Source: Fimbriosthenelais zetlandica
Lineage: Eukaryota
Length of the DNA stretch: 64,000 nt
NCBI GenBank assembly: GCA_977030845.1
Contig: OZ365111.1
Location: 12,028,001 to 12,092,000, forward strand
Reading direction: 5' to 3'
Below the pieces are notes generated by a model. The model saw only the letters and a program-made list of their open reading frames with translations. It did not search any database and was not told where the DNA came from. Positions 10,581-64,000 of this stretch are shown here, in pieces. Both the position numbers and the translations under genes were made by a program. Within the stretch, counting starts at the first letter, position 1, and every line of letters begins with the position of its first letter.

Positions 10581-11298
10581 CATTATTTCATGTTGGCAAG
10601 TACTTTAAAGAAGTTCAGCAAGGAAGTGGCAGTTAAGTGAGGTGAGAAAATAAGCACACAAGATTTGAACAAGCATATTATACATGTATGAATACAAAAA
10701 ATATCCACAAAGAACAGGATATGATTGCGTTATAATTAACTCAGTTTAGGCTTTTTTTCTTCCTTATTATTCCTCTCACAGCCTTCACTCCTCTCTCCTA
10801 GCTTTTCTAAGTCTTCCAGAACCCTTCAAGCCTTCAGTTCTTCAGGTCTCTGTCTCTTCTGTCCATCGGTCTCAGTCCATCCCATGGCTCCCTCTCTATC
10901 CCTAATTCCTTCCCCCTATATATATATCTGTCCCACCCCACTTTATTCCCATGGTCTGGCTATAAGGGACTGACCCATAAGTGGAGTGACACGCTATGGT
11001 TACAGTAACTTACATGAATACATGATTGTAGTTTGTTCTACATTATCACCTAGAAACCTGACCTGAGTGTGTATGGAATCCTAGCTGAGTGGGAACAAGG
11101 GAGGTGCTTATAAACAGAGAGCCTTCATATGACACTCAGACAGTGTCCTCCTCCCACCTCCCACCACAGACATGGTGGTGGGTGTTACTAACCAACACTG
11201 TGGCTTTGACCATACCCTCTGACTTGCCAAAGGCTTTGATTTCTTCAAATAATTTGAAATTTCCCCCTCACAGACATTTAATTATAGAGGCTTTATAC

Positions 11299-11503: not shown

Positions 11504-14500
11504 TAGAGGTCCAGAAGAGGAGCTGACCAGTTTGAAATTCCAGTCCGGCCTTGGGAATGATAGCCAGTCTATTAATACCACAATAAATCATGAGATTTTT
11601 TCAGCTTTGCTGCTGCCGGAATGGGAGATAACATCCTCATTCTGGTGTTCCTCTCAAGGCAATTTCTACTCTGACATATCAGTGCCATCTACTACCAATA
11701 TCCTATGAAGCAAGGCATAGAAAAAGCATTTTCTCATCATATATAAATCGAAAAGTTTTATATATACCGGTATATGGAATTGTGCATTGCAGGAGAGGGA
11801 CTCATTTTTGTCAATTTTTTCTTATTCTGACAATCAGGAAAGGCCTGAAACAATCTAATTCTGTGGCAAACAATTAATTCCTTTTTTGACCTGGAGAAAA
11901 ATAACACTGTACTCCTAATGGTGCTGTAACATGGAGTGGGCAAGGTGTGCCAGATGCAATCAATGTATCCGGCCTTGTGTAAAGCATTGTACTCACTTTG
12001 CCCATTGTTCAGTATGGCTCTTAAGCTTACAGTAGACAAGACCATAGCTCACAACACGTGTCGGCTACTTATCTATAAATCTCTAATAGTTATAAGGCAG
12101 ACAATGAATGAAAGATCATCAATATCATAATTATTGAAAACCAGATCATAACTTTCTAACTTCCGATTTTATGAAAACATATTTGACAGATGTCTCCCAC
12201 ATTTTACTAGAATATATTCATGATGAATAACTAATAAAACAGAGATAGATAATTCACCAGAACACTGGGCATAGAAATTTATAATTTATAATAATAGATC
12301 ATAAATTGCCATATATATGTATGTATATGGCATCTGTTCAATATAGTCTTGCCATAAGAGCCAGCCAGAGCAATACAGTGTGATCAATACTACAAACATC
12401 TGTCTGGTGTTAGATGTGATTGGGAAAGGCTGGCCAGCTCAGTTAGAGGAGCTGCATGCCTGAGCAGGTCCTGATATAACCATCAGCTGCTCTCAATGAC
12501 TCACTTATACCCGGTCTCTAAAACAGGAGGCCTCACAGACTCCAGACAGAGAAACAGACACCTTTATTTTATTTTATTAGTAAACGATTTGTACCCAGAT
12601 CTATTCGAAAGCCATAAATCATTAAATGCTCGGACTTAATATTTTAATAGACCAGTCTGAACACTAATTTTCTTTAAATTAATTTTCATTTCTCTAATTT
12701 ATTTAATTAAAACTCTTCACTATTAGTTTAATACCCATCTTCGTGGTCTGAGATATACCCATTATAAGTATTAAATTATTTAAAAAAAATCAGTATTGAA
12801 GAAAGAATAATTCATGGTTTTACAAAATATCAAAGTTCAATTACAGTTTACAACCCGATTCGTTTGTTGCAGCAGCCCATACCAAATAGTAGGTCATTAT
12901 TTGGTTCTACATGGAAAATGGTTCGGAACGATCGATTGTCGTCCAAGCATGTAATAGGCAATATGAAAAAATCATGTAGGCCTACAATGTATGGTATTAA
13001 GTCAAATTACAATCCTAGAAATCCTATTTTTGAATTACTGAAAAATTAGTTTTCACTTATAATATTGATGAATGGGACCAGAACCTTCAAAATTCTGCTG
13101 GTGTAAACATTACAATACCTAATAGCTAAGTATGAAAAGAGAAACAACATATTAGGGAATAAATATTTTTTTCATCGAATAGTGTTAACGAACAGAGCCC
13201 TTAGGTTAATCATGGCCAAAATCATGGTTCGTTTATGACACATAAAGCCATTTCAAGATGCCTTGGGTCACTCAGCCAAAATAGATTTATGAACAAGTTG
13301 CATGCTGCTAAAAAATGTCCAAGGTCACCGTTATGTAGATTTGCATGCAAAGTAGTGTGAAGTGGAAAGTATCATGTAAGCCCAACATTCAAGTTTTATG
13401 TCATTACAGGAATCGATAAGTAACATGTTGAACTAAAAATATTCGGTTAAGGTCAGGACTAACTTTCATTTCAACTCTCTATAAGTTAGTCTTATGTCAT
13501 TTAAATTTCGTCATTTAAATTTCGAAAAACCGGATAATTCCTGTCAGAATTTAACTAGTGCCGTAAGAATAAATTATGTACATGTAAATGTGTTTTACAT
13601 GGATAATATAGCTAAAAATAGACATAGCTATGGAGCTTAAAATCGTGAAGGATAATTTGTATTCATACATGTACATGATACATGATGCATGTAAACATAA
13701 CGTGATTTTCTCCACTATGTTCACTTATGCAATATATCATTTATGATGCGCTCCCAATTTAGTCATCAAGTACAATTATGGCGGCAATAGTCATATATAT
13801 ACATATACAAACACTATATTAATCGTGTTTATGGGAAGCATGTAGGGTAAAATAGGAGTCTGACATAGGAGCACCTGCCTCCCGCCAACTCCAGGAAAAT
13901 GATCTCAAGAGCACTTGACCCAAGTCTAAGCAAAGGTCGGCGACCAACTATTCCGACTTGAAAAGTCATATAGGTGCTGACAAATACGCCTGACATGCAT
14001 AGAAACGCTGTGACATACATGTCAGGGCCAGGCTGAGTCCGTTTGTTTTTAGGGGGATGGTCTCAAGCAACAGAATTTTTAAAAAATGTCAGCACTTGGT
14101 ATCGAATGTAGTCAAGAAGCGATTCATAAAACAGCGACTATTGTCAATAGTATTGTAGCACTGACTCAAGATGGAATTCCAAATGATTATAGGCCTACAT
14201 ATGATAGAGTATTGAAATATTGAAAACTTTCTGTTAAAATATTCCTGGTGCAATTAGGATTTCAATAGGTTTATAGAAAAACCCGCATTTGGACATTTTT
14301 TGTTTGGTACCGAAAGCCTAATTCCTTGTTAACCGTAGGAAATGGGAATGTGATTTGCCCCAAAAAATTCTGTTCCTCACTGGAAAACCTCCAATTCTTT
14401 CCATCAGTGAAATTGTTCAGCTGGGGACTGTAGTTGCCAAGTAGATCAGTGCCTCGGGCCTGTAATAATCACTGAGGCCTCCAAATATGGGGGGGGGACA

Positions 14501-17658: not shown

Positions 17659-17871
17659 AACAGCCATTAGAGGTAGTAAACCAAATGGTAATATTTCCAG
17701 AACCTCCCCAACCGCGGAGGTTGATTATTCTACTGACCAGACACATTAAGCTGATACATTCGGTACTTTTTAAAAGTTTTAAATTATGAATTGATATTAA
17801 ATATATTTTCCTTTTCACCGTCGCTTCTCATGTACCACAATTTGTTGAACACCAACAGATCCAAGCAGTCA

Positions 17872-17990
17872 GTGGCCAAATGGTTAAAGAGATGAACTCT
17901 CAATACGAGGGGCATGTCAAACTAGCTTCGAGTCCTGCCATGTTCCGCGTTTTCGCTTTTTTTCCAACTGCTTATTTATTCTAACTCCCT
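17872..17990 (+). mobile_element. tRNA-derived SINE-like copy, plus strand (same family as 28140-28240)
   Basis: AGTGGCCAAATGGTTAAAG (A box) ... GCTTCGAGTCC (B box-like) ... TTTTTCCAACTG; aligns with the 28.1-kb copy. Confidence 0.55.
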
Positions 17991-22100: not shown

Positions 22101-25100
22101 GAAAATGGTCGCCAAAAGTAGTTTCTAATATTACTAATATAACTGTAGAACTGAACATTCCAATGTAATTTGCATGTAGACATGCAAGTCAAACAAATGA
22201 TATCCATATTTCTTAAAAACATATCAGAAAGCAGCACATGGCATCAACAATCATGTGATAGTGCCATGTGAGCAGATGCACTGAAATGATGAGAGGTCAA
22301 CTGGTAAAGTTCTTTAACCATCCTATCTGCTAACTTAAAAATTTTACCATCAGAAACTTTGCATACAGACATAGCCCCTGATGTAAAAATTAAAATATAT
22401 CATAGATGGCACCTTTTCACAAGTAGCAATCGGGAATTGTTTTAACATGTGTCCTGAAAGTCGGCAAAAAGCAGTTCACATTCCTCTTATGGGTGGATAC
22501 ATCTATAGGAGAGAATTTGAAACAAACCCTATCAGACTTTCACCGACACAATCTTTGGTATGGTAGGTTTATAAAAACCACATGTTTATGAATATGAACA
22601 AAGTACTAGTACTTGTAGATGCCATAAATGAATAATACGATTTCTGGCTAATATATATATTGAGGGTGTGTAGTTCTCTTTTCGGAGAAATGCTAGCAAA
22701 CGGCAATATTCCCAAACCCGTCAAGAAAATGCCTTAAAATAATTCATTTCGCCAATCAGAATTACTAAGGGAGGAGGCAGATTAAATGGTAAATAGCCTG
22801 GGAATCTGAGAGTGACTTATAATTAAGCAATAACACAAATCATTCAAGGTTCATAAGCATGAACAATAAAATGCACATAACAAGGTATAATGACTGCACA
22901 GGTTGTTGAAGGGGGATCTCTCTCAGAGGGTGGCTCATTTCCCTATTTGTATAATGACAATTTGAATCCCTTTGCACTGAGTGACATATTTTATACCAGT
23001 ATTTGTAAAGGTAGGGGGGGGGAGTGTTTGCAGTTCCCTCCTATCTCTAGACCTAAGATTCATCAGGGCTATTCAGGTAGCAAGGGGTAACAGTTATAGT
23101 ACTTGAATAAAGTGGTATTATAAGCTTAAAAAAATCCCCGTTGGATACATTTAAAACTACCGTGACATATATATATGTATTACATTTTTTTCAGACTAAA
23201 TTCACACTGTCGGTGTAATACTTGGAGGATTGGGTGTCACATCAGAAATATCAGATTCATCTTCTAGTCTGAGATATGAAGCAGGTGGAAATCTATTCAA
23301 AGTTTGGTAGTAATTTCATCTGACAAGTCACTAATTAAACTTCGTGTGTTGGCTAAAGATTGAAAGGCATATCATAGCTAAAACAAATGATGAGCTTACG
23401 CAATGTCATTTAGGAAAAAAAAGCCGCATAATCCAAATCTGAAACTTCTAAAATTCTGCTATGTTGAATTCTAGAATGACGCAGCAGCAGAATTTCTAGC
23501 AAAACAAATTACCCAAATCAAATTAAACGAACAAGTCTACAAATTATAGATTTCAAATTTTGATAGTTGCACATTAAATAGCATCTTACCTGGGGCTGAA
23601 CAATAGCAAAAATCCAAAAAGGTCCAAAAGTTTGAGTCAGCGTATCTCAAGCACTACACTAATGTCCATCCCAGTTTAAGAGAGTTAGCCTGTGTCTAAA
23701 GTGGGCGGGATCTGATCAGCACCATGAGACATAATCAGAACACCAGTGTCAGTGTACACTAAAATGATGGTGTGACTTATGAAGGGACCCATCTACAATT
23801 TAATCGATAGATAATATAATAAAATAGATAACAGGTCAGAGCTTATCATCAGGTAGCAATGCAGTTGTTTACTTTACGTATGAATGGAATTTCAAGAGTC
23901 ATCTCAGGGGATAAATAGCTAAGTAAAAAGTTGACTTATATGGCAATCCCTACCGGTACATAGTTTTAAGCTACTAAAATGCACTGCGAACGATTTATAA
24001 AAGTTCTATGAACTCTGGGGGTAAATGTGGAGCTTGGGTTGATTTATGAATTAATTAATTAGATTAATTTAATCTTAAATCTATTAATTAACTCGGGGAC
24101 GGATTATCTGTCATTAAGGGCAAAATGGGTTCAGAATGCAGCATCATCAAATTTTGAATTCTAAAATTCTGATTCAGCATTTCTCTGGAGATGGTATCAG
24201 TTGATATTGAAATCAATTTTCCAGTGGGTAAGTTCTCCAGTTTCATGGCGATAATAAATATCTTTTATCAGAACTAATTTGATAAAAATAAGATACTTTT
24301 CCCATAAAATAAGGAATTCCAAAATTTTGATGACATAATTATTAGTATATCATACCCATACATGTAATTGAACCCACCGAGGCGTTGTGACTAAATATGG
24401 AATGCTTAAAAGAGGGCAAAGATCAAAGTATTACAAATATTCATCCTGACATAGAATGAAAGTGTAACATGCTTGTTGCCTATGACTAGAGCAGTAGACA
24501 CTCTTCCAGTTCGCTAGCTGCCCTTGGCAGCCAGCTAGCCCCCACCTCGGCCAGCAAAGCTTGCCAAAACTAGCGATTAGGTGGCAGATTTCACAGACAG
24601 CTCCTGGCCCCCGTCAATTCACCCCAACAAGGGCTGATCTTAAAACGACCCAGGAGTTAGGGCGGGGAGAAAATGGCTAGAAAAGTCTGGAGATTTATAA
24701 AGGAACACTTGCATGTTGATCATTTGAGATAGCAGTCATTTTGGCATGGAAGGGTTGACACCCTGTAAATGTTATTTCCATCTGAGTAGAATCTTTCTGC
24801 AGGATGAGTCAGCCTAGTTAAAGGGGTAATTGATGAAGCCACAGAGGGAATCTTTTGACTCAAGGGTTGAATCATAATATTGTAGGAGAGAATGGGTGTG
24901 CTATCTAGAGTGAGGGTCATTTTATCTCAAATCAGGTACAATTTACTACACTTTATCAATTCACTAATAAATATTACAGACCTACATCGTGTAGGCCTAT
25001 ATCCCATTACTCTCAGGATCTACCATGTCAAGTCATAAAAGGTCGGCTATACCACCAGTATCAACTTCTAAACATAAAATATTAATAAGTTTGAAGTATT

Positions 25101-27216
25101 AGACCTACCTTGTCAACTTGAAATTAATAAAGATAACATCCAAATCCGAGACATAGAAATCCCTACAAAGAGAAAAAAGATGCGATCAGGAACAAGTTAT
25201 CACAAAATAGAGCACAGAAAGTTGGGATTTGTATAACTGAATGGAGGCTTAGGAGGCTACTCATTCGGACCATTTGAGGTTCCAATGTAATTCTCCTCAA
25301 TGGACTGAACTTGTGAAGTGACGTTAGTAGTTAGTACACTACCAATTTGTTTTTACACGGGATTTACTCGGAGCTGAAAAGATTTTTCAGAGCACCGTAC
25401 CCGGTATAGGTAATGTCTCTCACAATATTTTAACTAGCTCTTACGTTGAAGTAAGTTCTGATTTGTATTCAAACTGTATACACTGAATAATATTAGTAAA
25501 CCATTATAAGCCGTTCATTATAATCACTGAATCAGTCATGGGTTCACTGGGTCAGAGGAGGTCGGCGTTTAATATTAAGCCTTACTACATTGTCTATTAA
25601 TTTCCTTCATATTTAAAGTCTTAAAGATTGTTATGTCGTCTAAAAATAGATCTATGGAAAATCAGGATTATATCAAAGTATGCCTGATTCATGTCTATTT
25701 AAGATGGATTAAGCCATGCAGTGGTTTTCTAACACTGCCAGGTCCATGGTCACGCACGGCCAAGCAAGGTATGTTAAGAATGCTCCTCACATTTATAAAC
25801 AATCGCCCTCAGCAGCAGCGCGATTAGTAGTGCTCACATTATACTAGGTCTGTCTATGGGATATAAGGTAGAGAGAGGGAAGCAGGTAGAACAGGCACTT
25901 ATCAATCCCTCAACCTTTCTCTTAGACTCAGTCAAGACAACCAAAACATTCCCCTTGACTTTTTATATTGAAAAGATGGAAACAATTTCAAGCTTGTCTG
26001 GGCAGAGTCTAGAAGGGAAAATGACCTGCAGAGATTATTGCCTGAGTAGCCTATAGGAAGAGGGATTTCCAGGTAGTAATATAGGGATTTCTAGATTTAC
26101 CGGTGTATTACTACGGTATCGGTACCGGAAGCATTATTTAAATGCCCTGTAGGATTCTATAGATTTTTTATTTATTAATTAGGCCTACCGGTAGGTATTA
26201 AGTTTTTTAATGGGTTGGGGGATGATTGATCCAGTCAGAGAAAAGATTATGTCTGAGGAAAAATAAATTCCCTGGACTAGACAGGGAGGAGCTAAATAAG
26301 GTGAAGACCTGGACTCACTAAAATTAATGACCTAGCCTAATGTGTAGTCATAGGCCTCGTGAAAACCTAATTTCCATTTAGGATTCTTACTACCGGTACC
26401 TAGGCCTAGGCCTATCTAGGCCTATAGATATGCCTAGTATAGTGTTACCTATACTGGTCTTATAGGCCTTGGCCTCTAGATAATCCGCAATGTTTCAATT
26501 AATATTTGAACAATCTAGGGCCTTGAGGGTTATAGTACGTCTACCGTACAGGTACTCAATTATTAGATATTAATTTAAGCCTACATGCCTAGGGCTGATA
26601 GTGATAGGGCCTACATTGAATTTGAAGATTATGCCTAATTTTGTAGGCCTACCGGGTAGCCTACTAGTAACGTGTGTTGTTACTAATAGTAAATACTATC
26701 TGAGGCGAGCACATTCCCTCAGACTCGGTCCTGATGTCACTGACACTGTGTATTGACATAGACCACTATTATCAAATACCGATAGGTCTACTGGAGAAGC
26801 ATCAAGCATGCCATGAGCTGCCTATGATTAGGCTACGGTATCATTCATAGACATGACATAGAGGCCTAACTAAATTTATCAGCACGTGCTTTGGTCGACT
26901 GGGTTCCAACGTTTTCATCCCGATAAGGAAACCCACTCTAAATATGGCTAAAGACGTTATTAGTCAGTAAGCCTACTGCAGTGACTGAGTAGTGAGTGTC
27001 AAAGCAAGTCCCACCCTCCTCCTCCCCCGCCTCCTTTCTCAACGGCAAGGAGTAGAGGCAGCCCCCGACCGGTCCCACGAAACCTGTCACACTCGACCGC
27101 CATCAGTGAACCCCCCACAAAAACCAAAACATTTCACCACTTCCTCGTTGTCAGTGTCATTAGAGACCTACCACTGAAGCTCCAGAGCTGACCTGAACTA
27201 AGATAACAAGTCCTAC

Positions 27217-27325
27217 CTTTTGGTTCGCTGTTTTTGGAAAGTGTATCCCTAAGTGGTTAACTTGTGAGTGCCAGCGTTGGGCGACTTTTTCAAACTGTGT
27301 CACTTACAATCCAAGATGGCGGCAT
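27217..27325 (-). other. Candidate non-coding first exon of the spectrin gene (distal promoter)
   Basis: Minus-strand donor AAAAG|GTAGGA at 27215-27216 directly below a CpG-richer patch with YY1 and CTCF motifs. The spectrin acceptor at 4360 needs an upstream exon. The 5' boundary is approximate. Confidence 0.4.
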
Positions 27326-27353
27326 GTTCAGTGACCATTGCGCCCCCTGGCAG
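27312..27353. promoter_or_regulatory. YY1 motif (CAAGATGGCGGC) plus CTCF-like motif (reverse complement CTGCCAGGGGGCGC)
   Basis: Close matches to the established YY1 and CTCF core consensus inside a patch free of TAGGCCTA. Confidence 0.6.
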
Positions 27354-27599
27354 AAGTGGCCGACACTCAAGGCTTGGTCAGCGCATCGAGACCAGCGCAA
27401 CGTGTGGCAAATGGAGGCCTAATGCCTAAGGGCCGCCTTCTCCCTTACCTTAGGCTTTTTTTATCTGAACGTTTGGGGTTTTCCCCCACCTTAGCCTAGG
27501 CCTAGCCTTGTCCTACCTAAGTTTTCCCATGGCGCCTTGACATGATAAGTCAAGTCAGGTCAAAATTAGTAGGCCTAACGTTAGGCCTACCGGTGTAAA

Positions 27600-27860
27600 C
27601 GCCCGAAAACACTCCCCCTAAAAAACACTCCCCCGTGTTTTGAGCCTTGAGGCTAGCCTCAGAACACTGGGGAGTCTTTTGAGCCTAGCCTCAAAACACA
27701 CAACTTTTCAGCCCCATAACACTTACCCTAGCCCCAAAACATTCCCCATCTTGACAATTGTAGCCTAGAGTCTTTTGAGGCTAGCTTCAAATCACTCTAG
27801 ACACTTAGGCCTACCCTAGCCCCAAAACACTCCCCATCCAAAAATTGCAATTGGAGTGTT
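27600..27860. repeat. Degenerate internal repeats (AAAACACTCCCC / CCTAGCCCCAAAAC / TTTGAG.CTAGC)
   Basis: Several imperfect copies of these sub-units in direct and inverted orientation. Confidence 0.7.
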
Positions 27861-27880
27861 GGAACTCCTACACCGGTACC

Positions 27881-27964
27881 GTAGGCCTAGACATTGAGCT
27901 GAGACATAAAAATTAGTAGGCCTAGACATTGAGCTTAGACATAAAAATTAGTTGACATTGAGCT
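27881..27964. repeat. 35-bp tandem repeat x2.4, with a further related copy at about 28105-28130
   Basis: GTAGGCCTAGACATTGAGCT.AGACATAAAAATTA twice, then GTTGACATTGAGCT. Confidence 0.9.
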
Positions 27965-28139
27965 AATAGCGATTTCCTCACTTAAAACAGCTGGGAACTT
28001 TACCAAAACTTACCATAGTAGGCCTACAGGTGAGATGTTTCCTTATTGGAATCCATCCTGTCTCTTCAGAGTCATTGCCAGTTTTTGAGATTCAGCAACA
28101 CAAACAAATTAGTAGACATGGAGCTAATAGTAGGCCTAA

Positions 28140-28240
28140 TACCGAGTTAAGGCGTTGAACTCCCAGTACCGGTACAAGGTTCATGCCAATGTGGTTCGAT
28201 TCCTAGCATGGACTAGGTTTTTCACTTCTTTTCCAACTGT
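28140..28240 (+). mobile_element. tRNA-derived SINE-like copy (same family as 17872-17990)
   Basis: TTAAGGCGTTGAACTCCCAG...GGTTCGATTCC (B box)...TTTTCCAACTG. Confidence 0.55.
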
Positions 28241-28246
28241 GCTAAT

Positions 28247-28426
28247 AAGAGGTTAAACCACGAGTGAAACGAGTTTAACCTCTTTATACCACGACTGAAT
28301 TTTTTTTTTTCATACCAATCAATAGTTCACAAATAGGCTAGTGTAATTCGATTCCCTTTTCCTTGTATTGATACAAAATGACTACAAGGAGAAATTAAAC
28401 TTCGGAGTCGTCGTCGTGGTATAAAG
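28247..28426. mobile_element. Small element with a 12-bp-stem hairpin followed by 14-bp inverted repeats (HINE/Helentron-like architecture)
   Basis: AAGAGGTTAAAC-cacgagtgaaacga-GTTTAACCTCTT hairpin (28247-28283); CTTTATACCACGAC (about 28282) versus GTCGTGGTATAAAG (about 28413-28426). Confidence 0.45.
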
Positions 28427-29625
28427 TGTCACTACCCCTCTCTTGTAAAACAATTTGTTATAGCCTACATCTGCTCAATCATAGCAGATTCAGTGGCCGA
28501 GGAGACGGCAAACATCGAGGGCGTTGACAGGACTAGGCCTACCGGTACCAGATTTCTGGTTGAAATCGACACAAGATTACATTGTTGGATTGTTCTTTAA
28601 ATTGTATTCCAGTTCTACACATAGCCCTACATGTATGAACGATTTAACGTTAGGACCTAGGCCTAATCAAGGTTTGTCATAGGCCAACCATAGGCCTATA
28701 GTAGGAGGGCCAAATCCCGCGTACTGTCGCTGTGAACTTCATTGCGCGCTCACTGCAGAAAATCTGTCACTGTGTCTAGCAACGCTAGTCGCGGTAATGT
28801 CTATAGTGGCTTATATTTAGAGTTGTTTTGACACACTATAATTGCTTTAAATAGTTTCATTGTACAGACAACATGTTGCCGGTCATTTTGATACCAGGCT
28901 TTATGGGAATGAGATGATTAAAAACAAGTCTGTACTATGTTGAAAAATAGCGAACTTTGAGGGTCTGTTTTTCGATGTTATAACAATTTGCCAAAAAACG
29001 CAGAAGTTTATGAGAACCAGTAATATGTTATTGACCACATGTGGAAGTTTGGTATATCTAGTGTGTTTTAAAAAAGTAATATGAGTTGGGATCTAACTCA
29101 ATGGCCATTGCCATGCTACCCTAGTCAGTGTATGCACCTGGCCCTCGGTAGGCCTACGCGCATAGCAGCGATGAGGCTACTGGTCACCTACTTCCCCACT
29201 GCCCAAGTGTGGACACATTTTCTGCAGGAATAAACATGGATATACAGAGTTCTCAATGTAGTAATTTGGGCTAACGTTTGGGGTTATATCTCAAGAACGG
29301 AGTGTGATATAAACTTCATTTAAAAAGCATTAAGCATAGTGTCAACTCGTTTATGAGAAGAGACCTTCAAATCAGTTCAATGTTGAAATTTTTTTTAATT
29401 GTGGCCTCCCTACCTATAGATTTAGTATAACTGGATGGACCACGTCACCTACCATAGGCCTACCGACTAGTTGGCGGCAGGCTATAGGCCTAGGCTAGTA
29501 AGCATAAGGCCTAAAAAAACACCCTTGCCTCCTACCATCAATGTGGATAAGTACCTAGGCATGCTTAATTGGATTACAGGACTGTATCCATTCTAATGCA
29601 TAGCTAGGTAATGATCCACATTGAC

Positions 29626-29654
29626 ACTAGGTGGCAGTGGTGCTGCCACCTAGT
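29626..29654. promoter_or_regulatory. Inverted pair of CTCF-like cores forming a 12-bp stem
   Basis: ACTAGGTGGCAG-tggtg-CTGCCACCTAGT; each arm resembles the CTCF core CAcYAGGTGGCAG. Confidence 0.45.
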
Positions 29655-29980
29655 AAGCAATGGGCGATTCGTTATCCAGCCACACTTAGACTGCTGTAGG
29701 CCTATATAGGCTAGTCCAAGTATGGCTAAATAATGATTATTTGATCATCTGAAGGGAAGAGTTTTTGACATATAATTCTTTAATTGTTTATTCTCATTCA
29801 TTATAAATTTATTGTCATTTTCTATTCATTAACACAAATTCATACTCTCATAGGACCCCCTCCACCCGGGAACCCCCCTATAGGCCTAGTGCATAGAAGT
29901 GTCCGGCTCACGCTCGCGGACGGACTCCCAATAACCCCGGTGAGTCAAAAGGGGGGTCGTTTTAAGTTGTTTAAATTTAT

Positions 29981-46923: not shown

Positions 46924-47728
46924 GAGGTAAATATTCATGGACGTGCCACGGTTGTGTGTTTGAGCAGGACAGGTGGGCGTCATGAAGGGAGAGTGCTATA
47001 TACAAAGCTGTATTAGATATGTGTCAACCTAGGCTATACATAGACATTAATCATTATTTTTACCTGCCATTAAAATTGGGTTTTGCGTATATTGATTCAA
47101 TCAAGCAAATTGATTCAATTCAAGCCTAAAACAACTATAGGGCCTATTATGGTACCCTTTCAAGATTTTTCTTAATATGGAAGGACTTTAGATTCCTTAA
47201 TTAATATTTTAAATATCGACTTGAAGTCATTCCAATATAATTTTGGCCCGCAGCTTCTAGGTTTAACTCAAGGCCCTGCAATATGCTCCTGAAGTACTAG
47301 CCGGATTGAACATGTCAGAGTGCTCGTTACAATACATAGATGCAGGACACTAGAGATTTTCTGCAAGAGCAGAACATATTGGCGGAAATCATCCATTTCC
47401 ATGTGATAAAGCACCGAGTCATTGTATAGAGATTCTTATACAACACATATGTCCCTAAACTCTACTATAGTTAGTCTTTAGATCTAAGATTCTTGGAAGG
47501 CCATTTATTTTAACACTCGAAAGTGTCCTGCAATGTTTATACCCCGACAGATCGTGGAAATATTATATATCATTATATGGAATATGGTAACTTAGGAAAG
47601 TACTAATGGATGGAGTTTGTAGGCATCCAGAGTATATATCAGAAAGTGTTCAGGAAGGAGGTCTGTGGAGCGGCCGGGGGGATATAAAGTGGATAGAACC
47701 TTCATTTGGCCAAGGCCATGTCTTTCTA

Positions 47729-48685
47729 CAGTGGAACCTCGCTATCCGGCCACCTCACTTTACCGGCCACCTCGCTATGTGGCCAGAAAAAGCCCAGTCC
47801 CGAATTTGTTCCCTCTATATCATGTTTAATTCTTATTCAATAAAACGGCCACTCACTAAACCGGCCACCTCGCGTTATGGCCGGCATTTCATGGACAAAC
47901 AAAGGATTTACATCTCACTAAACCGGCCATGGTGACCAGAGGAGCAGACATTTCTTTGATGATGTAACAGCACGGCGCGACTGGGGGGCCGACGCCGAGT
48001 CTGAGGGGCGGATTAAATCATTAAAACTACATGTAGATAGCCCTGAATACACACATTCACCCCCTACCCCTTACCAGCAGGCATGATCATAGCCTCATTA
48101 ATGGTTTTCAAAACGACCTTTAATTCAGGCACTTTGCTGATGAAATCAAAGAAATGTTCTCATAATTTATTTAGCCATTTCACACTAAACCATCGAATCT
48201 AAACAAAGTTAATCGTAGCTTGACTCATATGTCTTCTGCGTGGGTAAATTTGAGTAAATGTTCTGTATGTGGTGTTTTATTTTAAATTTTGCCTTGATCT
48301 GATCTATTAACAGAAATTTATTCACAACTTAGGCCAATTTATGGGACAAATCGTGGCTGTCGGTAGGCGAAACCACCATAACGGGCCGGTGATGAAGCCC
48401 TACCAGGTCTATCAGTGGGAGAAACCACCAAAAAAGCACATTTTATTTATTTATAGAATAAAAATTGTTGGTTTCCTTTAAACAAGACCTGATCGTCCCT
48501 ATTTTATTATGAAAAGAGATGAGTATACCGGTAGTGTAAACATTGCGCATTTGGTGGTCAGCAATCTAATGACCAATATGGTTGTGTAGGCTATCGGGCA
48601 ACTGTACCTCACCAAACCGGCCATCTCGCTATCCGGCCAGAAAAGGCTCAGTCCCAATGGTGGCCGGATTAGTGAGGTTCCACTG
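47729..48685. mobile_element. 957-bp non-autonomous Tc1/mariner(pogo)-type DNA transposon in CDKL1 intron 1
   Basis: TA|CAGTGGAACCTCGCTATCCGGCCACC ... GGTGGCCGGATTAGTGAGGTTCCACTG|TA: ~26-bp TIRs, TA target duplication, subterminal CCGGCCA(C/T)CTCG repeats, no transposase ORF. Confidence 0.9.
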
Positions 48686-50942: not shown

Positions 50943-51179
<237 letters not shown>

Positions 51180-52070: not shown

Positions 52071-52649
52071 CTTTACACACACGGTCTACAGGCAGCCAGT
52101 CACTGTGGACGCTTTACATGCTTTCTATATAATATGTGGAGTAGGCATGTAGACTAGATAGGACTATTAATTACCTAAAATAGTAGTCCGTACATATAAA
52201 TAACTAGATATTAAAATATACATTATTTATAACCTAGGGCTAGGCATCGGTTGTTGTTTTTATAGAAAGCATCCTGACTAATATTAGTAGGTTGGTAGGG
52301 CCTAGGAATAGGCCTAGGCATAGTCATAGATGCTGATTCAGCATAAATCTAGCCTAGATAACAGGCCTAGTTATGCCTAGAATAGATGAAACCAGTAGCC
52401 TATAATTGATTCCAAGGTAGGCCTACCGGTAAGAATCGGAATATTAAGCCACTTAGGCAGTAGCCTAACATTATGGCTTAGGCTATGCCTTAGGCCTACT
52501 AGGCCCTAGCCTAGGCCTACTGATATGATTCAAAAAGGCTTCTAGAGCCATAGAAGCTAAGAGGCCTAAATAGATGATTCTATTTGGTGCTGCTACCTTG
52601 TGCGTCGCCAGTGAACTGAGCTCCTCCGCGCCTTTACTTCAGACGGAAA

Positions 52650-52664
52650 CCACCAGGTGGCAGC
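52650..52664 (+). promoter_or_regulatory. CTCF-like motif
   Basis: CCACCAGGTGGCAGC, near-canonical CTCF core. Confidence 0.6.
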
Positions 52665-52734
52665 TCTGTTAGTATTAGGTCTATGGTCGCCACCATCAGC
52701 TGAGTGCCCAAGCATCCGGTTATCTGAGGCGTGG

Positions 52735-52814
52735 CACACTCCGCATAGTGGCGCTCCAGTCGTTCCTCCTTAGAAGAAGGGAGGAACGACTGGAGCGCCA
52801 CTGTGCGGAGTGTG
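52735..52814. other. 80-bp GC-rich foldback (35-bp stem, 10-nt loop)
   Basis: CACACTCCGCATAGTGGCGCTCCAGTCGTTCCTCC-ttagaagaag-GGAGGAACGACTGGAGCGCCACTGTGCGGAGTGTG; the single mismatch is a G:U-compatible pair. Confidence 0.9.
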
Positions 52815-53529
52815 GAGGCGTGGTTTACTAATTTGTGAACTAACTTAGCAAGAATACTAGCCTAGGCCTATGTTTCCTCTTTTTAGGCCTATGTCCATGA
52901 ATTATATTTTCCAAATTTCACGAGGCTAGACCTAGGCCTAAAATCATCCCTTCAATTTTTTTTTTTTTTTAGTTAGATTTTTATAGGCCTAGGGCCTAGA
53001 GCCTGTTATGGGTGAATAGGCCTACCAGTAGGCTACCAGCTTGCACTCTTGATTAGGCCTACTCAAGTTTCTCGTATGATTTTCAGCTGGGGGCTCTTTC
53101 TATGCATAGGCTATGTGCATTAGGCCTAGGCCTACTACATTGCCTTGTGTGAGATGGATATTTCTAGGTGCATGTGGTAGATAGAACATAGGCCTATTAG
53201 TTAGGCCTAGCCTATATGCATAACCTTGAGGAGGGAGGCATTGGAAAAAACAACTGAGCTAACTCCCCTCCTTTCGATGGCATAGGCCTAGGTCTGACAT
53301 GTTGGGATCATGGCTCCATAGGCCTAGCCTACTAGCCTAGTTTTACCCGCTTTGCCGGCTACAGTCTATTCGCTCTAAGTTGATCCGAAACTACAGTAGG
53401 CCTACATATGTAGGCTATGGTGGTTTCGGATCAACTTAGAGTGAACAGACTGTACATAGGTGGCTTGCAGTAGGCCTAGGCCTAGTGGTGCCCTGAGGTC
53501 ACCATTTGGTAGCGTGCTAATAATGTCAT

Positions 53530-53589
53530 CCGGAAGCGTCTGACCGGAAACGACTACCGACCAATCAGAACAGAGAACCAGGTGGCGCT
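53530..53589. promoter_or_regulatory. Promoter-like core: two ETS sites, CCAAT box, CTCF-like motif
   Basis: CCGGAAG (53530), ACCGGAAA (53543), CCAATCAG (53561), CCAGGTGGCGCT (about 53578) in a CpG-richer patch. Confidence 0.55.
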
Positions 53590-54460
53590 CTTTGCACGAG
53601 GCCATTTCTTCACGAATCTCGGAAAAGTTGGATTAGGCTAAGCGAAGTCTCAAGATCACCCAAGACACAATTTTGATCGACGATCGATATCCTGAGCGCC
53701 GAGAAGACGCCTACCAACTTGGCAACTTTCGCTTTGCAACTTCAACTTGGCAGTAAAGTGGAGTAAACACCTTGCACGATTGTAGCAGGACGCGTTCAAA
53801 ACATCCTTCCTCGCCAATGTTATTAGGCCCTACCAACCAATGTGTCGAAAATGGATAGGCCTAGGCCTAATTCATTCTATTGATACTTAAACGTCACTAT
53901 GGACATAGTTTTAACTGCAGGAAGTGTGAGGGACGAGTTGAATTTGAGGAGCGGAAAGTGCCATGAAATCATCCCATGATTATGATAGGCCCTAGTGATT
54001 GTCTCCTTCGTGGTTCATCACGTCATTGTTGTTTATTCAACCACAAATCGCCAAGAATACATTGAGTGACTGAGCCATCTGACGCTATCGTACCGGTTCT
54101 GCATCAAACTGTAAGTATAGTTCGTAGGCCTATAGTTATCTGTAGGCCTAGGCTACACATTGTTTTCACTTTTATAAGAATCTTATAGTTATAGGCCTAC
54201 GGTGTTTACGAGAGTGGGAGACTTCTGAGAGATCTAATATTGTTTGGAGTTGATAATTATATTTTATCTAGGCCTATGTAGGCCTACAATCTGTAATTCA
54301 TTATAGAGTGATAACAGTTTGAGACATAGGCCTATATTCCTCTAGACGGAGTATCTGTCCCGGTGAGGAAGACGAGGCTTGTTTACAGGCTAATATTCCT
54401 CCAGCCATGTGTGTACAGGACCGCTGTGCGGTGGCAGCACTGTAGCCACTGATATACCTA

Positions 54461-55077
54461 GGCCTGCTGCATGTGAGATACAAATTGGGCTTTTCTAGGA
54501 AATTATAGGGCATATGCCAGCCAGGTATATTAGGACGGCATATTTTGAAGAAATTCAAATAAGTGAGTTGGCCTAATTAGGCCTAATTATCTATAGAATA
54601 TGGAAACAACTGACGCGCATAGGTCTATGCTGGCTGGCTGGGCAATGCGCCCTCTATGTGCGCTCATCTAAATCCGTTACCCTGATTGCACCCCATACAA
54701 GTACCCCACCACAGGCAAAAGTGGAAACTAACGCTCAATGGTAGGCCTGTGTCAATGGGAGAAAGCTTCTCGCCTCTCAAGATATTCAGCATGGACTCCA
54801 TAATGAAATGTATATGCAGGTAGGCCTAGATAAACCATTCATCTAGGCTTCGTCTAGGCTTATTCACTATTTAAAAAAACAATTTTGACTCCATTGAACT
54901 TTTGCCATTGTATTAGATTGTTTCCATATTCTATAGATAATTAATTAGGCTAACTCACTTATTTGGATTTCTTCAAAATATGCCGTCCTAATCTACCTGC
55001 CTAGCATATATGCCTAAGGATTAGACCTTATATCATTTCCTAGAAAAGACCAATTTGTATCTCACATGCAGCAGGCC
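54461..55077. mobile_element. ~620-bp foldback element with ~150-bp diverged inverted arms, bounded by TA|GGCC...GGCC|TA
   Basis: Left arm 54461-54610 aligns with the reverse complement of 54917-55077 (GGCCTGCTGCATGTGAGATACAAATTGG...TTCTAGGAAAT...TTAGGACGGCATATTTTGAAGAAAT.CAAATAAGTGAGTT...ATCTATAGAATATGGAAACAA). Confidence 0.75.
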
Positions 55078-58000
55078 TAGGCCTAATTGAGTGAATAGAC
55101 CCAGGCCTATGATTGCCTGCCTATATTTGATTTTGATAGCACCTTAATGAGTGAATGACCTTCTAGCCCTGATGACCCCCGTGTGACCTTCAGTCGGGGT
55201 GTAGGTCAGAATGTCTGGTATGTCTCACAGACAGTGACCGGTCACTCATCCCCCGCACTTCACCTGTTTTTCAGACACAAGTGTCTGGGTCCATATTTAA
55301 AGTTAGCGAAGTTATTTTTTAGCAGAAAAAAGGGCGTATCATAAAAATAATTAATAGGCCTATTATTGTATGTCAAATTAGCATAGCCCTATGTAAGCCT
55401 AAAGAAAAAAGGTGAAGAAAATAAAAACATATGTAAAAAGTATGTACATGTACCTGTGCATTGGCCAAGAGGAATTGACTTGTGGGTCCAAGTATTTAGA
55501 ATGTTGCCAGACTGCCACTTAGAGTAGGCTTACTTCCTCTATAGGCCTCGGAGTAGTCCTATTGGATACATTACAGGATTTACGGTTATGATCAACCTCT
55601 AATAGTCCTAATATTGAATCCCAAACTATTCATTCAAGGATCCCTACAATATTATTTGTTCAAAGTGAAGATGGAAAAACGATAGAAATATTCATCAATT
55701 TGTATGTGTTTATAGTATATTGGGTTGTCTTTCATCTATTTTTTTTAATGAAAATAACAGTTCTGCCCAACCCTATACTTGAACAAGATCCCATCCCCAT
55801 TATACCAAGCACTCCCCCCCCCCCATCCCAACCCCGCGCCACCCGTCCGCGTATTTTCCGGAACGTCCATTTACACTTCCATCACTTGTGGTCAATAATT
55901 GATGATCATAGGTCAATATTCGAGTTTGTACCACAAGAACTGTGTACTACCTATTGACCCATAGACCTTCCGTTACCTAATTTTGGAGTATTTAAAAAAA
56001 TTCTGAAACAGCCCCCTGGGTCTCGTGAATAGCATCGTTCAAGGGTCCTCCCAGCATTCCAACTTTTAATTTGGGTGGCAATGCAAGTAAAGTCAATTCA
56101 AAATTGAAAATTTCAATAATCTTGAAGAATGTATAGTAAATATTGTGAAATCCTTTTGATTAAATCTCTTGAGTTTTATCCTATATAGTTTATGACTCTT
56201 GAACCATCATCAAGATAATTATACATGTCATCCATCAATGTCAATGTCATTCATTACGTAATCTTTCAACCCCATATAAATGCGGTAACCACAGACACAC
56301 TGTTAATGAGATGAGCTGCACTGGTGTTCATTTTGGGTGAATGAATGGGTCCATAGAAAATGAACACATGGCAATTGAACTCGGTGCTGACTTCTGCTTT
56401 TGAAAAGTGTACACAACTTGATTGATTTTGCAGAGATGTAACCTAATATTAAGCCGACAGTTATAGAATCCATTGGCTTTTATCGAGTGTCCTTTTATTT
56501 CCAACCTTCTCCTCTGTGACCCTTTCCACTCTCCCAAGCCAAAGGTATGACTCATTCAAAGCTTGGGGTGAATGCATTGAGTGGTCTCGTTCAGCACCCC
56601 CTTGATTTACATTAAAAATATGTAGTTTTCAAAAAACCACTTAAAATTCACAAAAATATCGCGGCGGTGCATCCTGTTGAATATTTTTTGGGTGTGATTT
56701 ACAGTAATTCTATAATTCCACAAATGAACCGGGTGCGATGACACACACAAATCCACCTGTCTATACCCCTCCGCTTGACTAATAGTTCAATCCATTGCCA
56801 TGTCTCTCAGTGAAGTGGGTCGGTCCATTGAAGGTGAAGGGGGAGACTAGTGGGTCAGTCAGCGCCGGCACACCACATTTCATGTCCCCAGGTCCGGAGT
56901 ACCAGACATACCCACACCTCGTGTGTACAAATTTCGCGGGAATATTTCAGAATTTGGATACTGTCATCTTCTGAACTCGTCTGATAACTATCTCGGTGAC
57001 CTTCTCCCGTTCTAGATGTGAGTATATTTTCATTTAACTTGCTTAGAAAACAACATGAAGAGGCAATACACAATTTCTTGATGACCCTCTGTAGATACCA
57101 TGCCCAGTTCAAAATCTAATCGTTCTAATCCCGTTTTACAAGCCTTTCTCAATCAAATATCGAACTAGTTGAATGAAAACTGTTAATATTTTTCTCCTTT
57201 GGGACACTGACTTCAGTTTAGCGTGAAAAAAGTACATCAATCTTGGTTATGAGGCCCACGCTTTGACTTTCTTTGAATGAATGGAGGGAAGCATGAAAGG
57301 CGTTTCACTATAACTAGGTGGCTTGTAGTAGGGAACACAGATGGTGATTACATTGGTACTGGACAGCTGGGGTGGGGATTGGGGAGAGGGGGTATGGGAA
57401 AGGTAGAGGGAGAGGCGGGTATGGGGAATAAGGTAGAGGGGGAGGGGGGCTTGTACCAGACAGCGGAGACTGGGTCGTACTAGAGAGAGGGTGAATGTTT
57501 TATACCTCCCGCTGCATATCACACCCCCAAGGTAATATTTCATTTAAAATTTTCTTCTAAATTATCGTTGTTAAATTTGAGCCTTGAGGTGGTGGATGAT
57601 TATTTTTATTCACTTCACTACCAGCAGATGTTTTGTGGCGGGATGATGCTCTAATGATGACTTGGAGAGGTTCCGGAATCAATGTTGATTCTACATGATG
57701 ATTCATAAATTAGGAATCCTAGCGAGCTAGCCTTAATGTGATGATTGTGTCTGTAATATAATGAAAACTATTTCTAAAATTGGCAAATATTCAGCCGTCT
57801 TATCTGTGAGTTGCACCAAAAATAAGGAAAATATTGGGATCTATAACATTATCACTTCCTCTATTGACATTATGATAATATTATATTTGCGGTGCATCCT
57901 ATGACCAACGGTGTTTTATTCTAAGCTAACATTTGAGCAATATATTATTTAGTGGAGTATATTTCAATATACAAAATTGTCATTGAAGGGAAATCCAGGA

Positions 58001-62565: not shown

Positions 62566-63861
62566 CAAACCTAGGTGTTATTTCCTCGTGCGCCATGTCC
62601 GACCAGCATGTTGCGAATTGGCAGCAGAATAATAAACAGAGCATTAAGTTGGGAGTAAAGTAGGGTTTGGACTTAATGAAAATCTCCTTGATGTCCCGGG
62701 ATTGTCTATCAGGGCTACCCAGCTGGGTGGAAGGCGGAGATGAGATGTGTTTACTATCTTTATCAGCCTGCGGCCTGAAAAGAGCTTATTTATAATCACT
62801 GGTAATCCAAGATTGCTTATTTTACTGAGATTCTTCGTTAATTCCCCAGGAATCTGTAGGATCATTTGGTCTTTGATGCAGAACATATTTCCTGAAAAGA
62901 AGTGGGTGCCACTTTCCCATCGTTACCATGTTTGTAATCTGTGGCAGAAATTCAAAGTGAAATGTCAACAGGTGTCACATGTTATGAATGGTTTAGAAAG
63001 CATAATGATTAATGGCAAAACTTAATTTCTTATATTTTAATCATAATAAGATATAGTGACAACCCTCTATGCATCTTCTTGATGGATGATGATTGATTAT
63101 AATGCCAGGATATAATATATGTAATTTCTTCAGAGATAACTACCTATCTCTTTCCTTTCACCCTTGCATTGAAATACATGGGATTGCAACTTCCATTTAT
63201 GAATTGAAACAAGCTGGTATATTTTGACAAAACAAAGTGTACCTAAATAGAATTTTTCATAATCAAATATACTATAGGAGGACCCAGCGGGTTAGCAAGT
63301 GCTCTTCCTGCCAGCACTGAGCACATTGGATGATTAGCTCATAATTATTATCATGTGTTTTATTGCTGACCCACCCAGGGAAATTAGGGTCCATGTTTAA
63401 TCACTGGCTTGATTGGTGCCCATACATTCATATGTACTGAATGATTGGGTTGGATTTAGTAGGCGTTCATATCATTGGGACGATGTATTACATATATTGT
63501 ATTATTTATATTACATATGCATAATGTTGTACAGATATCAAATATTATTAAGGAAATATTCACCTATTGCCATTTTCAATTCAATGTTATGGCATTATAC
63601 AGAAATGTACAGGATGAGGGGCCATATCATTTATACCATTAGTCCCTAACTTCATGAAATAGTTATGAAATCTGTACCTTTGTAGTAATAATATTAGGTA
63701 TCGTTTTACTACAGGACGGAAATACCGGTATTTCACATCCAGTATGTCAATGATTGATATGACTGTGACATCATCTCACACAATGAAACCCAGACTATGA
63801 TAATGGAACCACTATATACCATGACTAGTTGGTATTAGCCAGTATGTGTATTAACTTTATA

Positions 63862-64000
63862 CCGTACTTGCCGGTGTATAACGCGCTCCGGGCTATAACG
63901 CGCACCCCCCTACCTCTCAAGTAAAATCCATATATAGTGCGCACCGGTGTATAACGCGCAATTTGTATACCCGTTTCTCCCACCCCAGACAGTGTCCTCC
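63862..64000. mobile_element. Left end of a Tc2/pogo-type (CCGTA-terminus) DNA transposon, truncated by the window edge
   Basis: TA|CCGTACTTGCCGGTGTATAACGCGC with subterminal repeats of TATAACGCGC (x3), the typical layout of CCGTA-TIR elements; right end not visible. Confidence 0.65.

What the first reader, a model, noticed from the sequence alone, without database searches (positions are those of the whole stretch)
28140..28210. Filled versus empty site no. 2: TACCGGTA inserted in a SINE copy
Seen: GAACTCCCAG-TACCGGTA-CAAGGTTCATGCCAA (28167-28174) aligns with GAACTCTCAA-TA-CGAGGGGCATGTCAA (TA at 17904-17905) in the other copy of the same SINE-like family. The copy inside the promoter-flanking field has gained CCGGTA, the footprint predicted for a CC...GG element such as the CCGTA family at 63862.
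Basis: partly seen in the sequence, partly recalled or inferred. Interest (0 to 1): 0.72.

Follow-up and report, generated by a model that had tools for sequence, protein, structure and literature searches.

The report
Six-letter transposon scar in a SINE
One copy of a tRNA-derived repeat next to a likely promoter has gained six letters (TA became TACCGGTA), most likely the scar a cut-and-paste jumping gene left on leaving; this animal genome carries thousands of such scars, crowded beside gene starts.

Summary
TACCGGTA at 28167-28174 lies in a tRNA-derived SINE copy. About 30 other copies, and all 18 exact genome matches of the flanks, have plain TA, so this is a private 6-bp gain that duplicates the TA. 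The only other genome hit of flank-TA-NNNN-TA-flank is a second SINE copy that gained GGCC at the same TA.

TACCGGTA belongs to a genome-wide class of TA-to-TA-NNNN-TA insertions:
- TAGGCCTA occurs 113,146 times and TACCGGTA 18,503 times.
- The mixed form TAGGGGTA is not enriched, so the two halves of the core are coupled, as inverted terminal repeats would make them.
- Variants one base shorter or longer at the centre are enriched, as expected of a repair joint.
- Polarised events are about 80 times denser in the two palindrome fields than elsewhere.

The best reading is a Tc1/mariner-type excision footprint of a TA-flanked element with CC...GG ends. Such a family exists: CCGTAYTTGCCGG MITEs, 1,097 ends, 93% TA-flanked, one copy at 63860. 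No direct link to this site was found, and its extant copies do not track the octamers.

The scan has met the TAGGCCTA form of this phenomenon before on other DNA of this genome. New here are a polarised CCGG event, a parallel hit at the same TA, the coupling test and a candidate donor.

The parts
28167..28174 (.). Octamer TACCGGTA. Six of its eight bases (CCGGTA or TACCGG; the placement is ambiguous) are a derived insertion at a TA of the SINE copy.
28146..28243 (+). tRNA-derived SINE head (A-box and B-box-like; weak tRNA model match in a sister copy). It serves as the neutral reporter that polarises the insertion.
27904..28501 (+). Whole repeat block homologous to other genomic copies. Besides the CCGG event it has gained TA-anchored insertions at 27920 and 28019 (GGCCTA), 28334-28340 (TAGGCTA) and 28461-28467 (TAGCCTA).
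28243..28426 (+). Copy of a 183-bp dispersed repeat (93-96% identical to other copies) inserted into the SINE. It carries its own 5-bp TA-to-TAGGCTA gain, absent from 17 other copies.
17870..17960 (+).
28534..28547 (.). Composite TAGGCCTACCGGTA, two units sharing a TA. The same composite lies at 26180-26193 and 52418-52431, and occurs 1,360 times in the genome.
24992..29888 (.). Palindrome field 1: 22 TAGGCCTA, 4 TACCGGTA and trimmed or extended variants around a motif-free island (about 26990-27410) that holds AAGATGGCGGC at 27313-27323.
52309..55362 (.). Palindrome field 2: 31 TAGGCCTA and 1 TACCGGTA, upstream of a minus-strand kinase exon at 50940-51176.
63860..64000 (+). Left end of a CCGTA-family MITE: TA followed by CCGTACTTGCCGGTGTATAACGCGC, cut by the window end. 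It is the candidate CC...GG donor family.
27590..27876 (+). Repeat with ends CCGGTGTA...TACACCGG, flanked by TA here. The family has about 100-bp inverted arms, but other exact copies are not preceded by TA, so it is not a proven TA-duplicating donor.

Best explanation
The six extra bases are an excision footprint. A cut-and-paste DNA transposon of the TA-duplicating (Tc1/mariner/pogo) kind, with inverted ends beginning CC and ending GG, inserted at the TA of this SINE copy and duplicated the TA. It later excised. The transposase cuts the non-transferred strand a few nucleotides inside the element, so each flank kept TA plus the first nucleotides of an end. End joining then sealed TA-CC to GG-TA.

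Shown: the gain is derived, it is anchored on a duplicated TA, and it belongs to a recurrent, location-dependent class whose two halves are always reverse complements. A TA-flanked MITE family with CC...GG ends lives in this genome and in this window.

Inferred: an element once occupied this site; the size of the cut stagger; the donor family; and that the fields arise because insertion prefers open chromatin beside promoters.
For: 1. Polarity: about 30 family copies and 18 exact flank matches have TA, and only this copy has TACCGGTA.
2. Parallel hit: the only other 6-bp filling of the same TA in the genome is GGCC, in another SINE copy.
3. Recurrence: among about 25 independent 6-bp insertions between repeat copies in 233 kb, 7 clean ones are TA-to-TAGGCCTA and 1 is TA-to-TACCGGTA. 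Five-base versions (TAGGCTA, TAGCCTA) also arise at TA.
4. Word statistics: TAGGCCTA 113,146 against 2,970 for its control and TACCGGTA 18,503. The top TA-NNNN-TA words are all palindromes.
5. Coupled halves: the mixed word TAGGGGTA/TACCCCTA occurs 12,710 times, below its control of 18,704. Independent halves would give about 90,000.
6. Joint-like heterogeneity: words one base shorter or longer at the centre are enriched 3-7x.
7. Serial units sharing a TA: TAGGCCTACCGGTA 1,360 times, and the chains in L009 and L015.
8. A fitting donor exists: TA|CCGTAYTTGCCGG MITEs, 1,097 ends, 93% TA-flanked, in inverted pairs, with a full copy at L004:2360-2531.
9. Precedent: Tc1/mariner footprints are TA + 2-4 terminal nt + TA (PMC6943129), and Minos leaves 6 bp (PMC10992017, PMC3386967).
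10. Intact pogo-type DDE ORFs are present in the genome.
Against: - No filled allele or empty-site series was seen at this TA, and no sequencing runs could be listed.
- Extant CCGTA-MITE ends on C1 are no closer to TAGGCCTACCGGTA sites than chance at 2-20 kb. They are dense at 6-16 Mb, while the composites stay frequent at 18-24 Mb.
- About 550 MITE copies stand against roughly 10,000 or more dispersed octamers.
- The far commoner TAGGCCTA still has no identified GG...CC element: none turned up in 233 kb here, and the foldback at 54459-55079 is unique to the window. One unidentified agent could therefore write both words.
- The nearby CCGG-ended repeat (27590-27876) is not TA-flanked in its other copies.
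- Some TACCGGTA copies are spread by satellites and by a young TE rather than arising in place.
- Only one polarised CCGG event was found.
Confidence: 0.55

Rival explanations
1. One still-unidentified agent writes all the TA-NNNN-TA palindromes (GGCC, CCGG, perhaps CATG) near promoters without a full resident element cycling in and out. Examples would be hit-and-run or abortive activity of an active or domesticated TA-specific transposase, or another templated repair process. On this reading the CCGTA MITE is a coincidence.
For: - GGCC and CCGG units share the same fields, the same TA anchoring, the same 8-mer to 7-mer ratio and even the same SINE TA.
- No GG...CC element was found for 113,146 TAGGCCTA.
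- The distribution of extant CCGTA copies does not track the octamers.
- Intact pogo-type ORFs exist that could be domesticated.
Against: - The fixed cores and strictly coupled halves need a symmetric template such as inverted repeats.
- No known repair or transposase activity adds a constant palindromic tetranucleotide without element ends (my own knowledge).
- A low-copy autonomous element would be invisible in the 233 kb that could be read.
Confidence: 0.22
2. TACCGGTA is a selected protein-binding site (a palindromic promoter-proximal motif). The six-base gain is an ordinary indel that was kept because it created a site.
For: - The octamers crowd into promoter-flanking fields.
- Palindromic octamers of the TA-NNNN-TA form can be promoter motifs, for example the Drosophila DRE TATCGATA. 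That example is recalled from my own knowledge and was not tested here.
Against: - Sites arise by 6-bp insertion with TA duplication, not by substitutions.
- Centre-length variants and serial chains sharing a TA look like repair joints, not like a binding-site model.
- The same events occur inside SINE and other repeat copies and in satellites.
- Selection could still shape which scars are retained.
Confidence: 0.08
3. Chance indel or local slippage with no special mechanism.
For: Only a single CCGG event was polarised. An adjacent A-to-G change shows that the copy has mutated in other ways too.
Against: - A random 6-bp insertion matches this one word with probability of about 1 in 4,096. The word is 28x enriched in the window.
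- The only other filling of this TA in the genome is the sister palindrome.
- The inserted bases are not a duplication of the flank.
Confidence: 0.04
4. The octamer is a subfamily feature inherited from a SINE master copy, or an assembly error.
For: None found.
Against: - The filled form with CCGG occurs once in 447 Mb.
- The nearest relatives (87-88% identical) lack it.
- The window lies inside a contig of more than 50 Mb, and the same class of event is seen in many independent loci.
- Reads could not be checked.
Confidence: 0.02

Closest known systems
Canonical excision footprints of Tc1/mariner elements (Sleeping Beauty TACAGTA/TACTGTA; Minos 6-bp footprint; Tc1/Tc3)
   Same: A duplicated TA brackets the first and last 2-4 nucleotides of the element. 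The joint is made by end joining and shows variants one base shorter or longer (PMC6943129, PMC10992017, PMC3386967).
   Different: Here the scars are fixed in the germline in tens of thousands of copies, are the most over-represented words of the genome, and pile up in kilobase fields beside promoters. The donor is not demonstrated, and for the commonest word it is not even identified.
Tc1/mariner-derived MITEs (Stowaway-like elements)
   Same: The CCGTA family is short (about 120-410 bp), has terminal inverted repeats, is flanked by TA in 93% of ends, and numbers about 550 copies.
   Different: No autonomous partner or transposase has been tied to it. Its termini begin CCGTA rather than the usual CAGT or YYAGGT (my own knowledge).
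Promoter-preferring cut-and-paste elements (P element, plant MITEs such as mPing)
   Same: Insertion concentrated in DNA just upstream of genes would produce fields like those seen here (inference).
   Different: Those elements do not duplicate TA. mPing excises precisely and P leaves longer remnants (my own knowledge). No such field of footprints has been described, as far as two literature searches show.
Palindromic promoter motifs such as the Drosophila DRE (TATCGATA)
   Same: An eight-base palindrome of the TA-NNNN-TA form concentrated near gene starts.
   Different: The DRE is a binding site maintained by selection. Here the word is created by a 6-bp insertion with TA duplication, also inside repeats and satellites. 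The comparison is recalled from memory and was not tested.

Membership tests
Tc1/mariner/pogo-type excision footprint | Extra bases sit between two copies of the TA target | tested here: met
   TA in about 30 family copies against TA-CCGG-TA here.
Tc1/mariner/pogo-type excision footprint | Extra bases equal the terminal nucleotides of both inverted ends of a resident element | tested here: met
   CCGTA-family ends are CC...GG. The coupled halves are shown genome-wide by the lack of the mixed word TAGGGGTA. This is a match of sequence only, not proof that this family was the donor.
Tc1/mariner/pogo-type excision footprint | An element demonstrably occupied the site (filled allele, or a revertant series) | not testable with these tools
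Tc1/mariner/pogo-type excision footprint | A DDE transposase of this superfamily that recognises those ends | tested here: inconclusive
   There are 47 pogo-type DDE_1 matches, several with intact frames, and 21 DDE_3 matches. The mariner profile found nothing, but it also rang in no control genome. None could be linked to CC...GG termini.
TA-duplicating MITE (the CCGTA family) | Terminal inverted repeats, short length, many copies | tested here: met
   L004:2360-2531 has 15 of 16 nt inverted ends. Inverted pairs lie 120-410 bp apart. There are 1,097 exact ends.
TA-duplicating MITE (the CCGTA family) | TA target-site duplication | tested here: inconclusive
   1,021 of 1,097 ends are preceded by TA. 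No empty paralogous site was available to show that the TA is duplicated rather than part of the repeat.
tRNA-derived SINE | tRNA-like head with internal promoter boxes, and dispersed copies | tested here: inconclusive
   More than 40 dispersed copies exist. The Rfam tRNA model scores 18.6 bits against a gathering score of 29 on a sister copy, with recognisable D-arm and T-arm. ARAGORN finds no tRNA. The tail and target duplications were not examined.
Selected transcription-factor motif | Sites conserved across species and bound by a protein | not testable with these tools
   The tools hold no related animal genome and no binding data.

The most novel reading that the evidence does not exclude
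Promoter-flanking DNA of this animal is continuously rewritten by germline traffic of TA-specific cut-and-paste elements. Their scars (TAGGCCTA, TACCGGTA and trimmed forms) accumulate at a rate within an order of magnitude of the point-substitution rate per site. They become the commonest words of the genome and a readable log of transposon visits. Different element families, or one agent with several outputs, leave distinguishable signatures, and CCGG is a second, independently polarised signature.
Probability: 0.4. Interest if true: 0.75.

Novelty: new variant of a known kind. Interest (0 to 1): 0.5.

Why it matters
If the reading holds, transposon excision is a major source of small insertions in regulatory DNA in this lineage. 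It would be strong enough to set the k-mer spectrum of the genome and to create kilobase fields of palindromes beside promoters.

The scars would record where and how often mobile elements visited. Repeat copies such as this SINE would act as clocks that give rates. The signature words would let one separate the activity of different element families over time.

This site also gives a concrete handle on mechanism. The CCGG class, unlike the commoner GGCC class, has a candidate donor family that can be tested in an excision assay.

Tried and rejected
I did not try to read more genome sequence by other routes. All sequence work therefore rests on the window plus 58 loci (233 kb), and on pattern counts.
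2. Sequencing runs for a polymorphism test: none was listed.
3. Literature searches for the octamers gave only primers and unrelated hits.
4. Using the 183-bp repeat as a high-copy reporter failed. Only 47 exact copies of the chosen 22-mer exist, and none has an 8-base filling at that TA.
5. The foldback at 54459-55079, which starts TA|GGCC, was tested as a GG...CC element. It is unique to the window, so it is rejected as a family.
6. The CCGGTGTA-ended repeat at 27590-27876 was tested as the resident donor. It is a real family with inverted arms, but its other exact copies lack the TA, so it is not accepted as a TA-duplicating element.
7. The 18-nt inverted repeat at 10670/13656, which starts TA|CATG, is not bounded at the TA and holds no transposase domain, so it is not accepted.
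8. Spatial association of CCGTA MITEs with composite octamers on C1: none at 2-20 kb.
9. Looking for a transposase between the paired CCGTA ends 1.7 kb apart (C1:13485707-13487422): no DDE hit was listed there.
10. L035:1429 was dropped as an insertion event after inspecting the alignments.
11. Repeat ends of the form TA|GG were sought by k-mer counting. Only internal repeat sequence turned up, plus one boundary seen in two independent copies.

Full report
**1. What is at the site**

The window reads GAACTCCCAG-TACCGGTA-CAAGGTTCATGCCAA with the octamer at 28167-28174. The two copies are only about 70% identical, so I looked for closer relatives.

The window is part of a 447-Mb, 79-contig animal assembly (contig C11). 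A search of that assembly with 28140-28243 gave more than 40 dispersed relatives at 76-88% identity. In all of about 30 non-redundant copies that I could read, the homologous stretch is CCCAATAC(A/G)AGG with no extra bases.

Two exact pattern counts settle the polarity:
- The empty form ACTCCCARTACRAGG occurs 18 times in the genome.
- The form with any four bases between two TAs (ACTCCCARTA-NNNN-TACRAGG) occurs twice. One is this site with CCGG. The other is a different SINE copy at C10:4248030 with GGCC.

The octamer is therefore a private, derived 6-bp gain that duplicates a TA. An A-to-G change lies next to it. It is not a subfamily feature.

**2. What the carrier is**

The carrier is a tRNA-derived repeat. 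A sister copy aligns to the Rfam tRNA model through the D-arm, anticodon arm and T-arm at 18.6 bits, below the gathering score of 29. ARAGORN and Rfam at gathering level find nothing in the window. 'SINE-like' is a fair name, but full membership was not established.

The whole block 27904-28501 is homologous to other copies. It is interrupted at 28243-28426 by a copy of a 183-bp dispersed repeat.

**3. The event belongs to a class**

In the window, TACCGGTA occurs 12 times against 0.43 expected, TAGGCCTA 63 times, and TACATGTA 18 times.

In a 233-kb sample (the window plus 58 loci from elsewhere), the most enriched of all 136 TA-NNNN-TA words are:
- TAGGCCTA, 35x
- TACCGGTA, 9.4x
- TATATATA, a microsatellite
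- TACATGTA, 7.7x

Among TA-NNN-TA words the top one is TAGCCTA/TAGGCTA.

Genome-wide, TAGGCCTA occurs 113,146 times against 2,970 for its reversed control. TACCGGTA occurs 18,503 times. Many of the latter near the start of contig C1 lie in 21-bp and 40-bp satellites, and one window site (48526) is part of the consensus of a very young transposable element. Not every copy arose in place.

An all-against-all comparison of the 233 kb gave about 25 independent 6-bp insertions between repeat copies. After inspecting the alignments, 7 are clean TA-to-TAGGCCTA events and 1 is this TA-to-TACCGGTA event. Five-base versions (TA to TAGGCTA or TAGCCTA) also occur, one of them supported by 17 other copies.

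**4. Location dependence**

TAGGCCTA is packed into two fields, 24992-29888 and 52309-55362.

Field 2 lies upstream of a minus-strand exon encoding the start of a protein-kinase domain (50940-51176). Field 1 surrounds a motif-free, GC-rich island with AAGATGGCGGC at 27313-27323. This is consistent with promoters but unproven without transcript data.

Inside the fields, 1.2 kb of DNA can be polarised against other repeat copies, and it holds 7 TA-anchored insertions. Outside, about 55 kb holds 4. That is roughly an 80-fold difference. The outside events themselves lie in loci with several TAGGCCTA. Five of the 12 TACCGGTA sites lie in the 8 kb of fields.

The location test rests on the class as a whole, however, with only one CCGG event.

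**5. Mechanism**

Any explanation must account for four facts: the duplicated TA, a constant 4-nt core, the palindromic form, and the local pile-up.

TA duplication is the signature of integration by the Tc1/mariner/pogo superfamily. On excision these transposases cut the non-transferred strand a few nucleotides inside the element. End joining then leaves TA plus the first or last 2-4 nucleotides plus TA (PMC6943129). Minos characteristically leaves 6 bp (PMC10992017, PMC3386967). An element with ends CC...GG predicts TA-CC-GG-TA.

I tested three consequences.

(a) The two halves of the core should always come from the same inverted repeat. The mixed word TAGGGGTA/TACCCCTA occurs 12,710 times, below its own control of 18,704. 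Independent halves would predict about 90,000 from the counts of the two palindromes. The other mixed words are not enriched in the sample either. This rejects untemplated addition at a break.

(b) A repair joint should vary at its centre. Words one base longer are enriched: TACC[C/G]GGTA 5 against 0.9, and TAGG[G/C]CCTA 11 against 1.6. So are words one base shorter: TAGGCTA/TAGCCTA 73 against 25.7.

(c) Scars offer new TAs, so serial units sharing a TA should occur. TAGGCCTACCGGTA occurs 1,360 times, often flanked by GGCC units on both sides. TAGGCCTAGGCCTA is frequent. Chains such as TACGGTA-CCCGGTA-CCCTA are seen in L009, and TACCGGTACCGGTG in L015.

A rough rate supports the model. About 6 events against some tens of substitutions on this 600-bp block puts the process within an order of magnitude of the point-substitution rate per site in the fields. 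By my own estimate, a moderately active element family could supply that.

**6. The donor**

TA|CCGTAYTTGCCGG occurs 1,021 times, and the same word without the TA 1,097 times, so 93% of ends are TA-flanked. Controls give 0-5. Plus and minus ends pair at 120-410 bp. A complete 168-bp copy with 15 of 16 nt inverted ends lies at L004:2360-2531. A copy cut by the window end starts at 63860. Its ends are CC...GG, so under a 2-nt cut, or a 3-nt cut with CG pairing, its scar would be TACCGGTA.

I could not tie this family to the site, for three reasons:
- On contig C1 its ends are no nearer to TAGGCCTACCGGTA sites than chance at 2-20 kb.
- The family is concentrated at 6-16 Mb, while the composites stay frequent at 18-24 Mb.
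- About 550 copies stand against roughly ten thousand dispersed octamers.

A second candidate lies 290 bp upstream: 27590-27876, with ends CCGGTGTA...TACACCGG and TA on both sides here. It belongs to a real family with about 100-bp inverted arms. However, the four other exact copies on C1 are not preceded by TA. I do not count it as a TA-duplicating donor.

The genome holds 47 pogo-type DDE_1 matches, several with intact open frames of 349-551 codons, and 21 Tc1-type DDE_3 matches. No sequencing runs were listed for a polymorphism test.

**7. Rivals**

- **One unidentified agent writing all the palindromes.** This stays alive because the much commoner TAGGCCTA has no identified GG...CC element. 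None turned up in the 233 kb, and the foldback at 54459-55079 is unique. GGCC and CCGG events also share fields, and even share the same SINE TA.
- **A selected binding motif.** This does not explain creation by TA-duplicating insertion, the centre-length variants, or the occurrence inside repeats and satellites. Selection might still affect which scars are retained.
- **Chance, a subfamily origin or an assembly error.** These are very unlikely.

**8. Comparison and novelty**

As a single event this is an ordinary-looking Tc1/mariner-type footprint. What is unusual is the scale. The scars are the most over-represented words of the genome, and they build kilobase fields beside likely promoters. 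Two full-text searches found no description of this.

Earlier notes of this scan, on other windows of the same genome and on this one, had already read TAGGCCTA as a probable excision scar of an unfound element. I treated them as leads only. This report adds:
- a polarised CCGG event, and a parallel GGCC hit at the same TA;
- the coupled-halves test and the centre-variant test;
- a quantified location effect;
- a characterised candidate donor family for the CCGG class, together with the negative association result that keeps the donor open.

**9. Verdict**

- Excision footprint of a TA-specific CC...GG element: 0.55. The CCGTA family as the specific donor accounts for perhaps 0.3 of that total.
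- Unidentified common agent: 0.22.
- Selected motif: 0.08.
- Chance: 0.04.
- Subfamily feature or artefact: 0.02.

Noticed in passing
window 47727-48687; octamer at 48526-48533: A TA-flanked element with 16-nt inverted ends CAGTGGAACCTCGCTA. A 123-bp internal stretch has at least 10 copies at 100% identity and about 30 more at 98-99% across many contigs, so the family moved very recently. It carries TACCGGTA in its consensus.
   Followed up: partly
G000 contig C1, about 152 kb, 269 kb, 308 kb, 633 kb and 686 kb: Tandem arrays with periods of about 21 bp and 40 bp in which every unit holds TACCGGTA. They inflate the genome count of the octamer.
   Followed up: no
window 28243-28426 and loci L002-L030: A 183-bp dispersed repeat (93-96% identical copies) without inverted ends. 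It starts with a 15-nt hairpin (AAGAGGTTAAACCAC ... GTGGTTTAACCTCTT), has an internal T-run and ends in GTGGTATAA. Its class is unknown.
   Followed up: partly
window 54459-55079: A 617-bp foldback with arms about 82% alike, bounded by TA|GGCC on both sides and unique in the genome. One arm differs from the other by GGCCTA at a TA (54578).
   Followed up: partly
G000 contig C1, 3-27 Mb: CCGTA-family MITE ends are very unevenly spread: 12-24 per 2 Mb between 6 and 16 Mb, and 0-4 per 2 Mb elsewhere in the first 24 Mb.
   Followed up: partly
G000 C39:3010106, C38:551106, C10:13609191, C39:1991253, C19:8719092: Pogo-type DDE_1 domains matched over their full length (154-163 bits) in open frames of 349-524 codons without stops. 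They could be active transposases or domesticated genes.
   Followed up: no
window 26098-26140: The stretch TACCGGTGTATTACTACGGTATCGGTACCGGAAGC is a chain of CGG/CCGG units punctuated by TA. It could be a heavily deleted CCGTA-type element or serial scars.
   Followed up: no
window 10670-10698 and 13656-13684: An inverted repeat of 18 perfect nt that contains TACATGTA at both ends of a 3-kb stretch. It is not bounded at the TA and holds no transposase domain.
   Followed up: partly
loci L052:881 and L053:959: Two copies of a repeat begin at TA|GGCCTTCGTTCACCCACCACC with unrelated left flanks. This is a possible GG-started element end, but there are too few copies to judge.
   Followed up: partly
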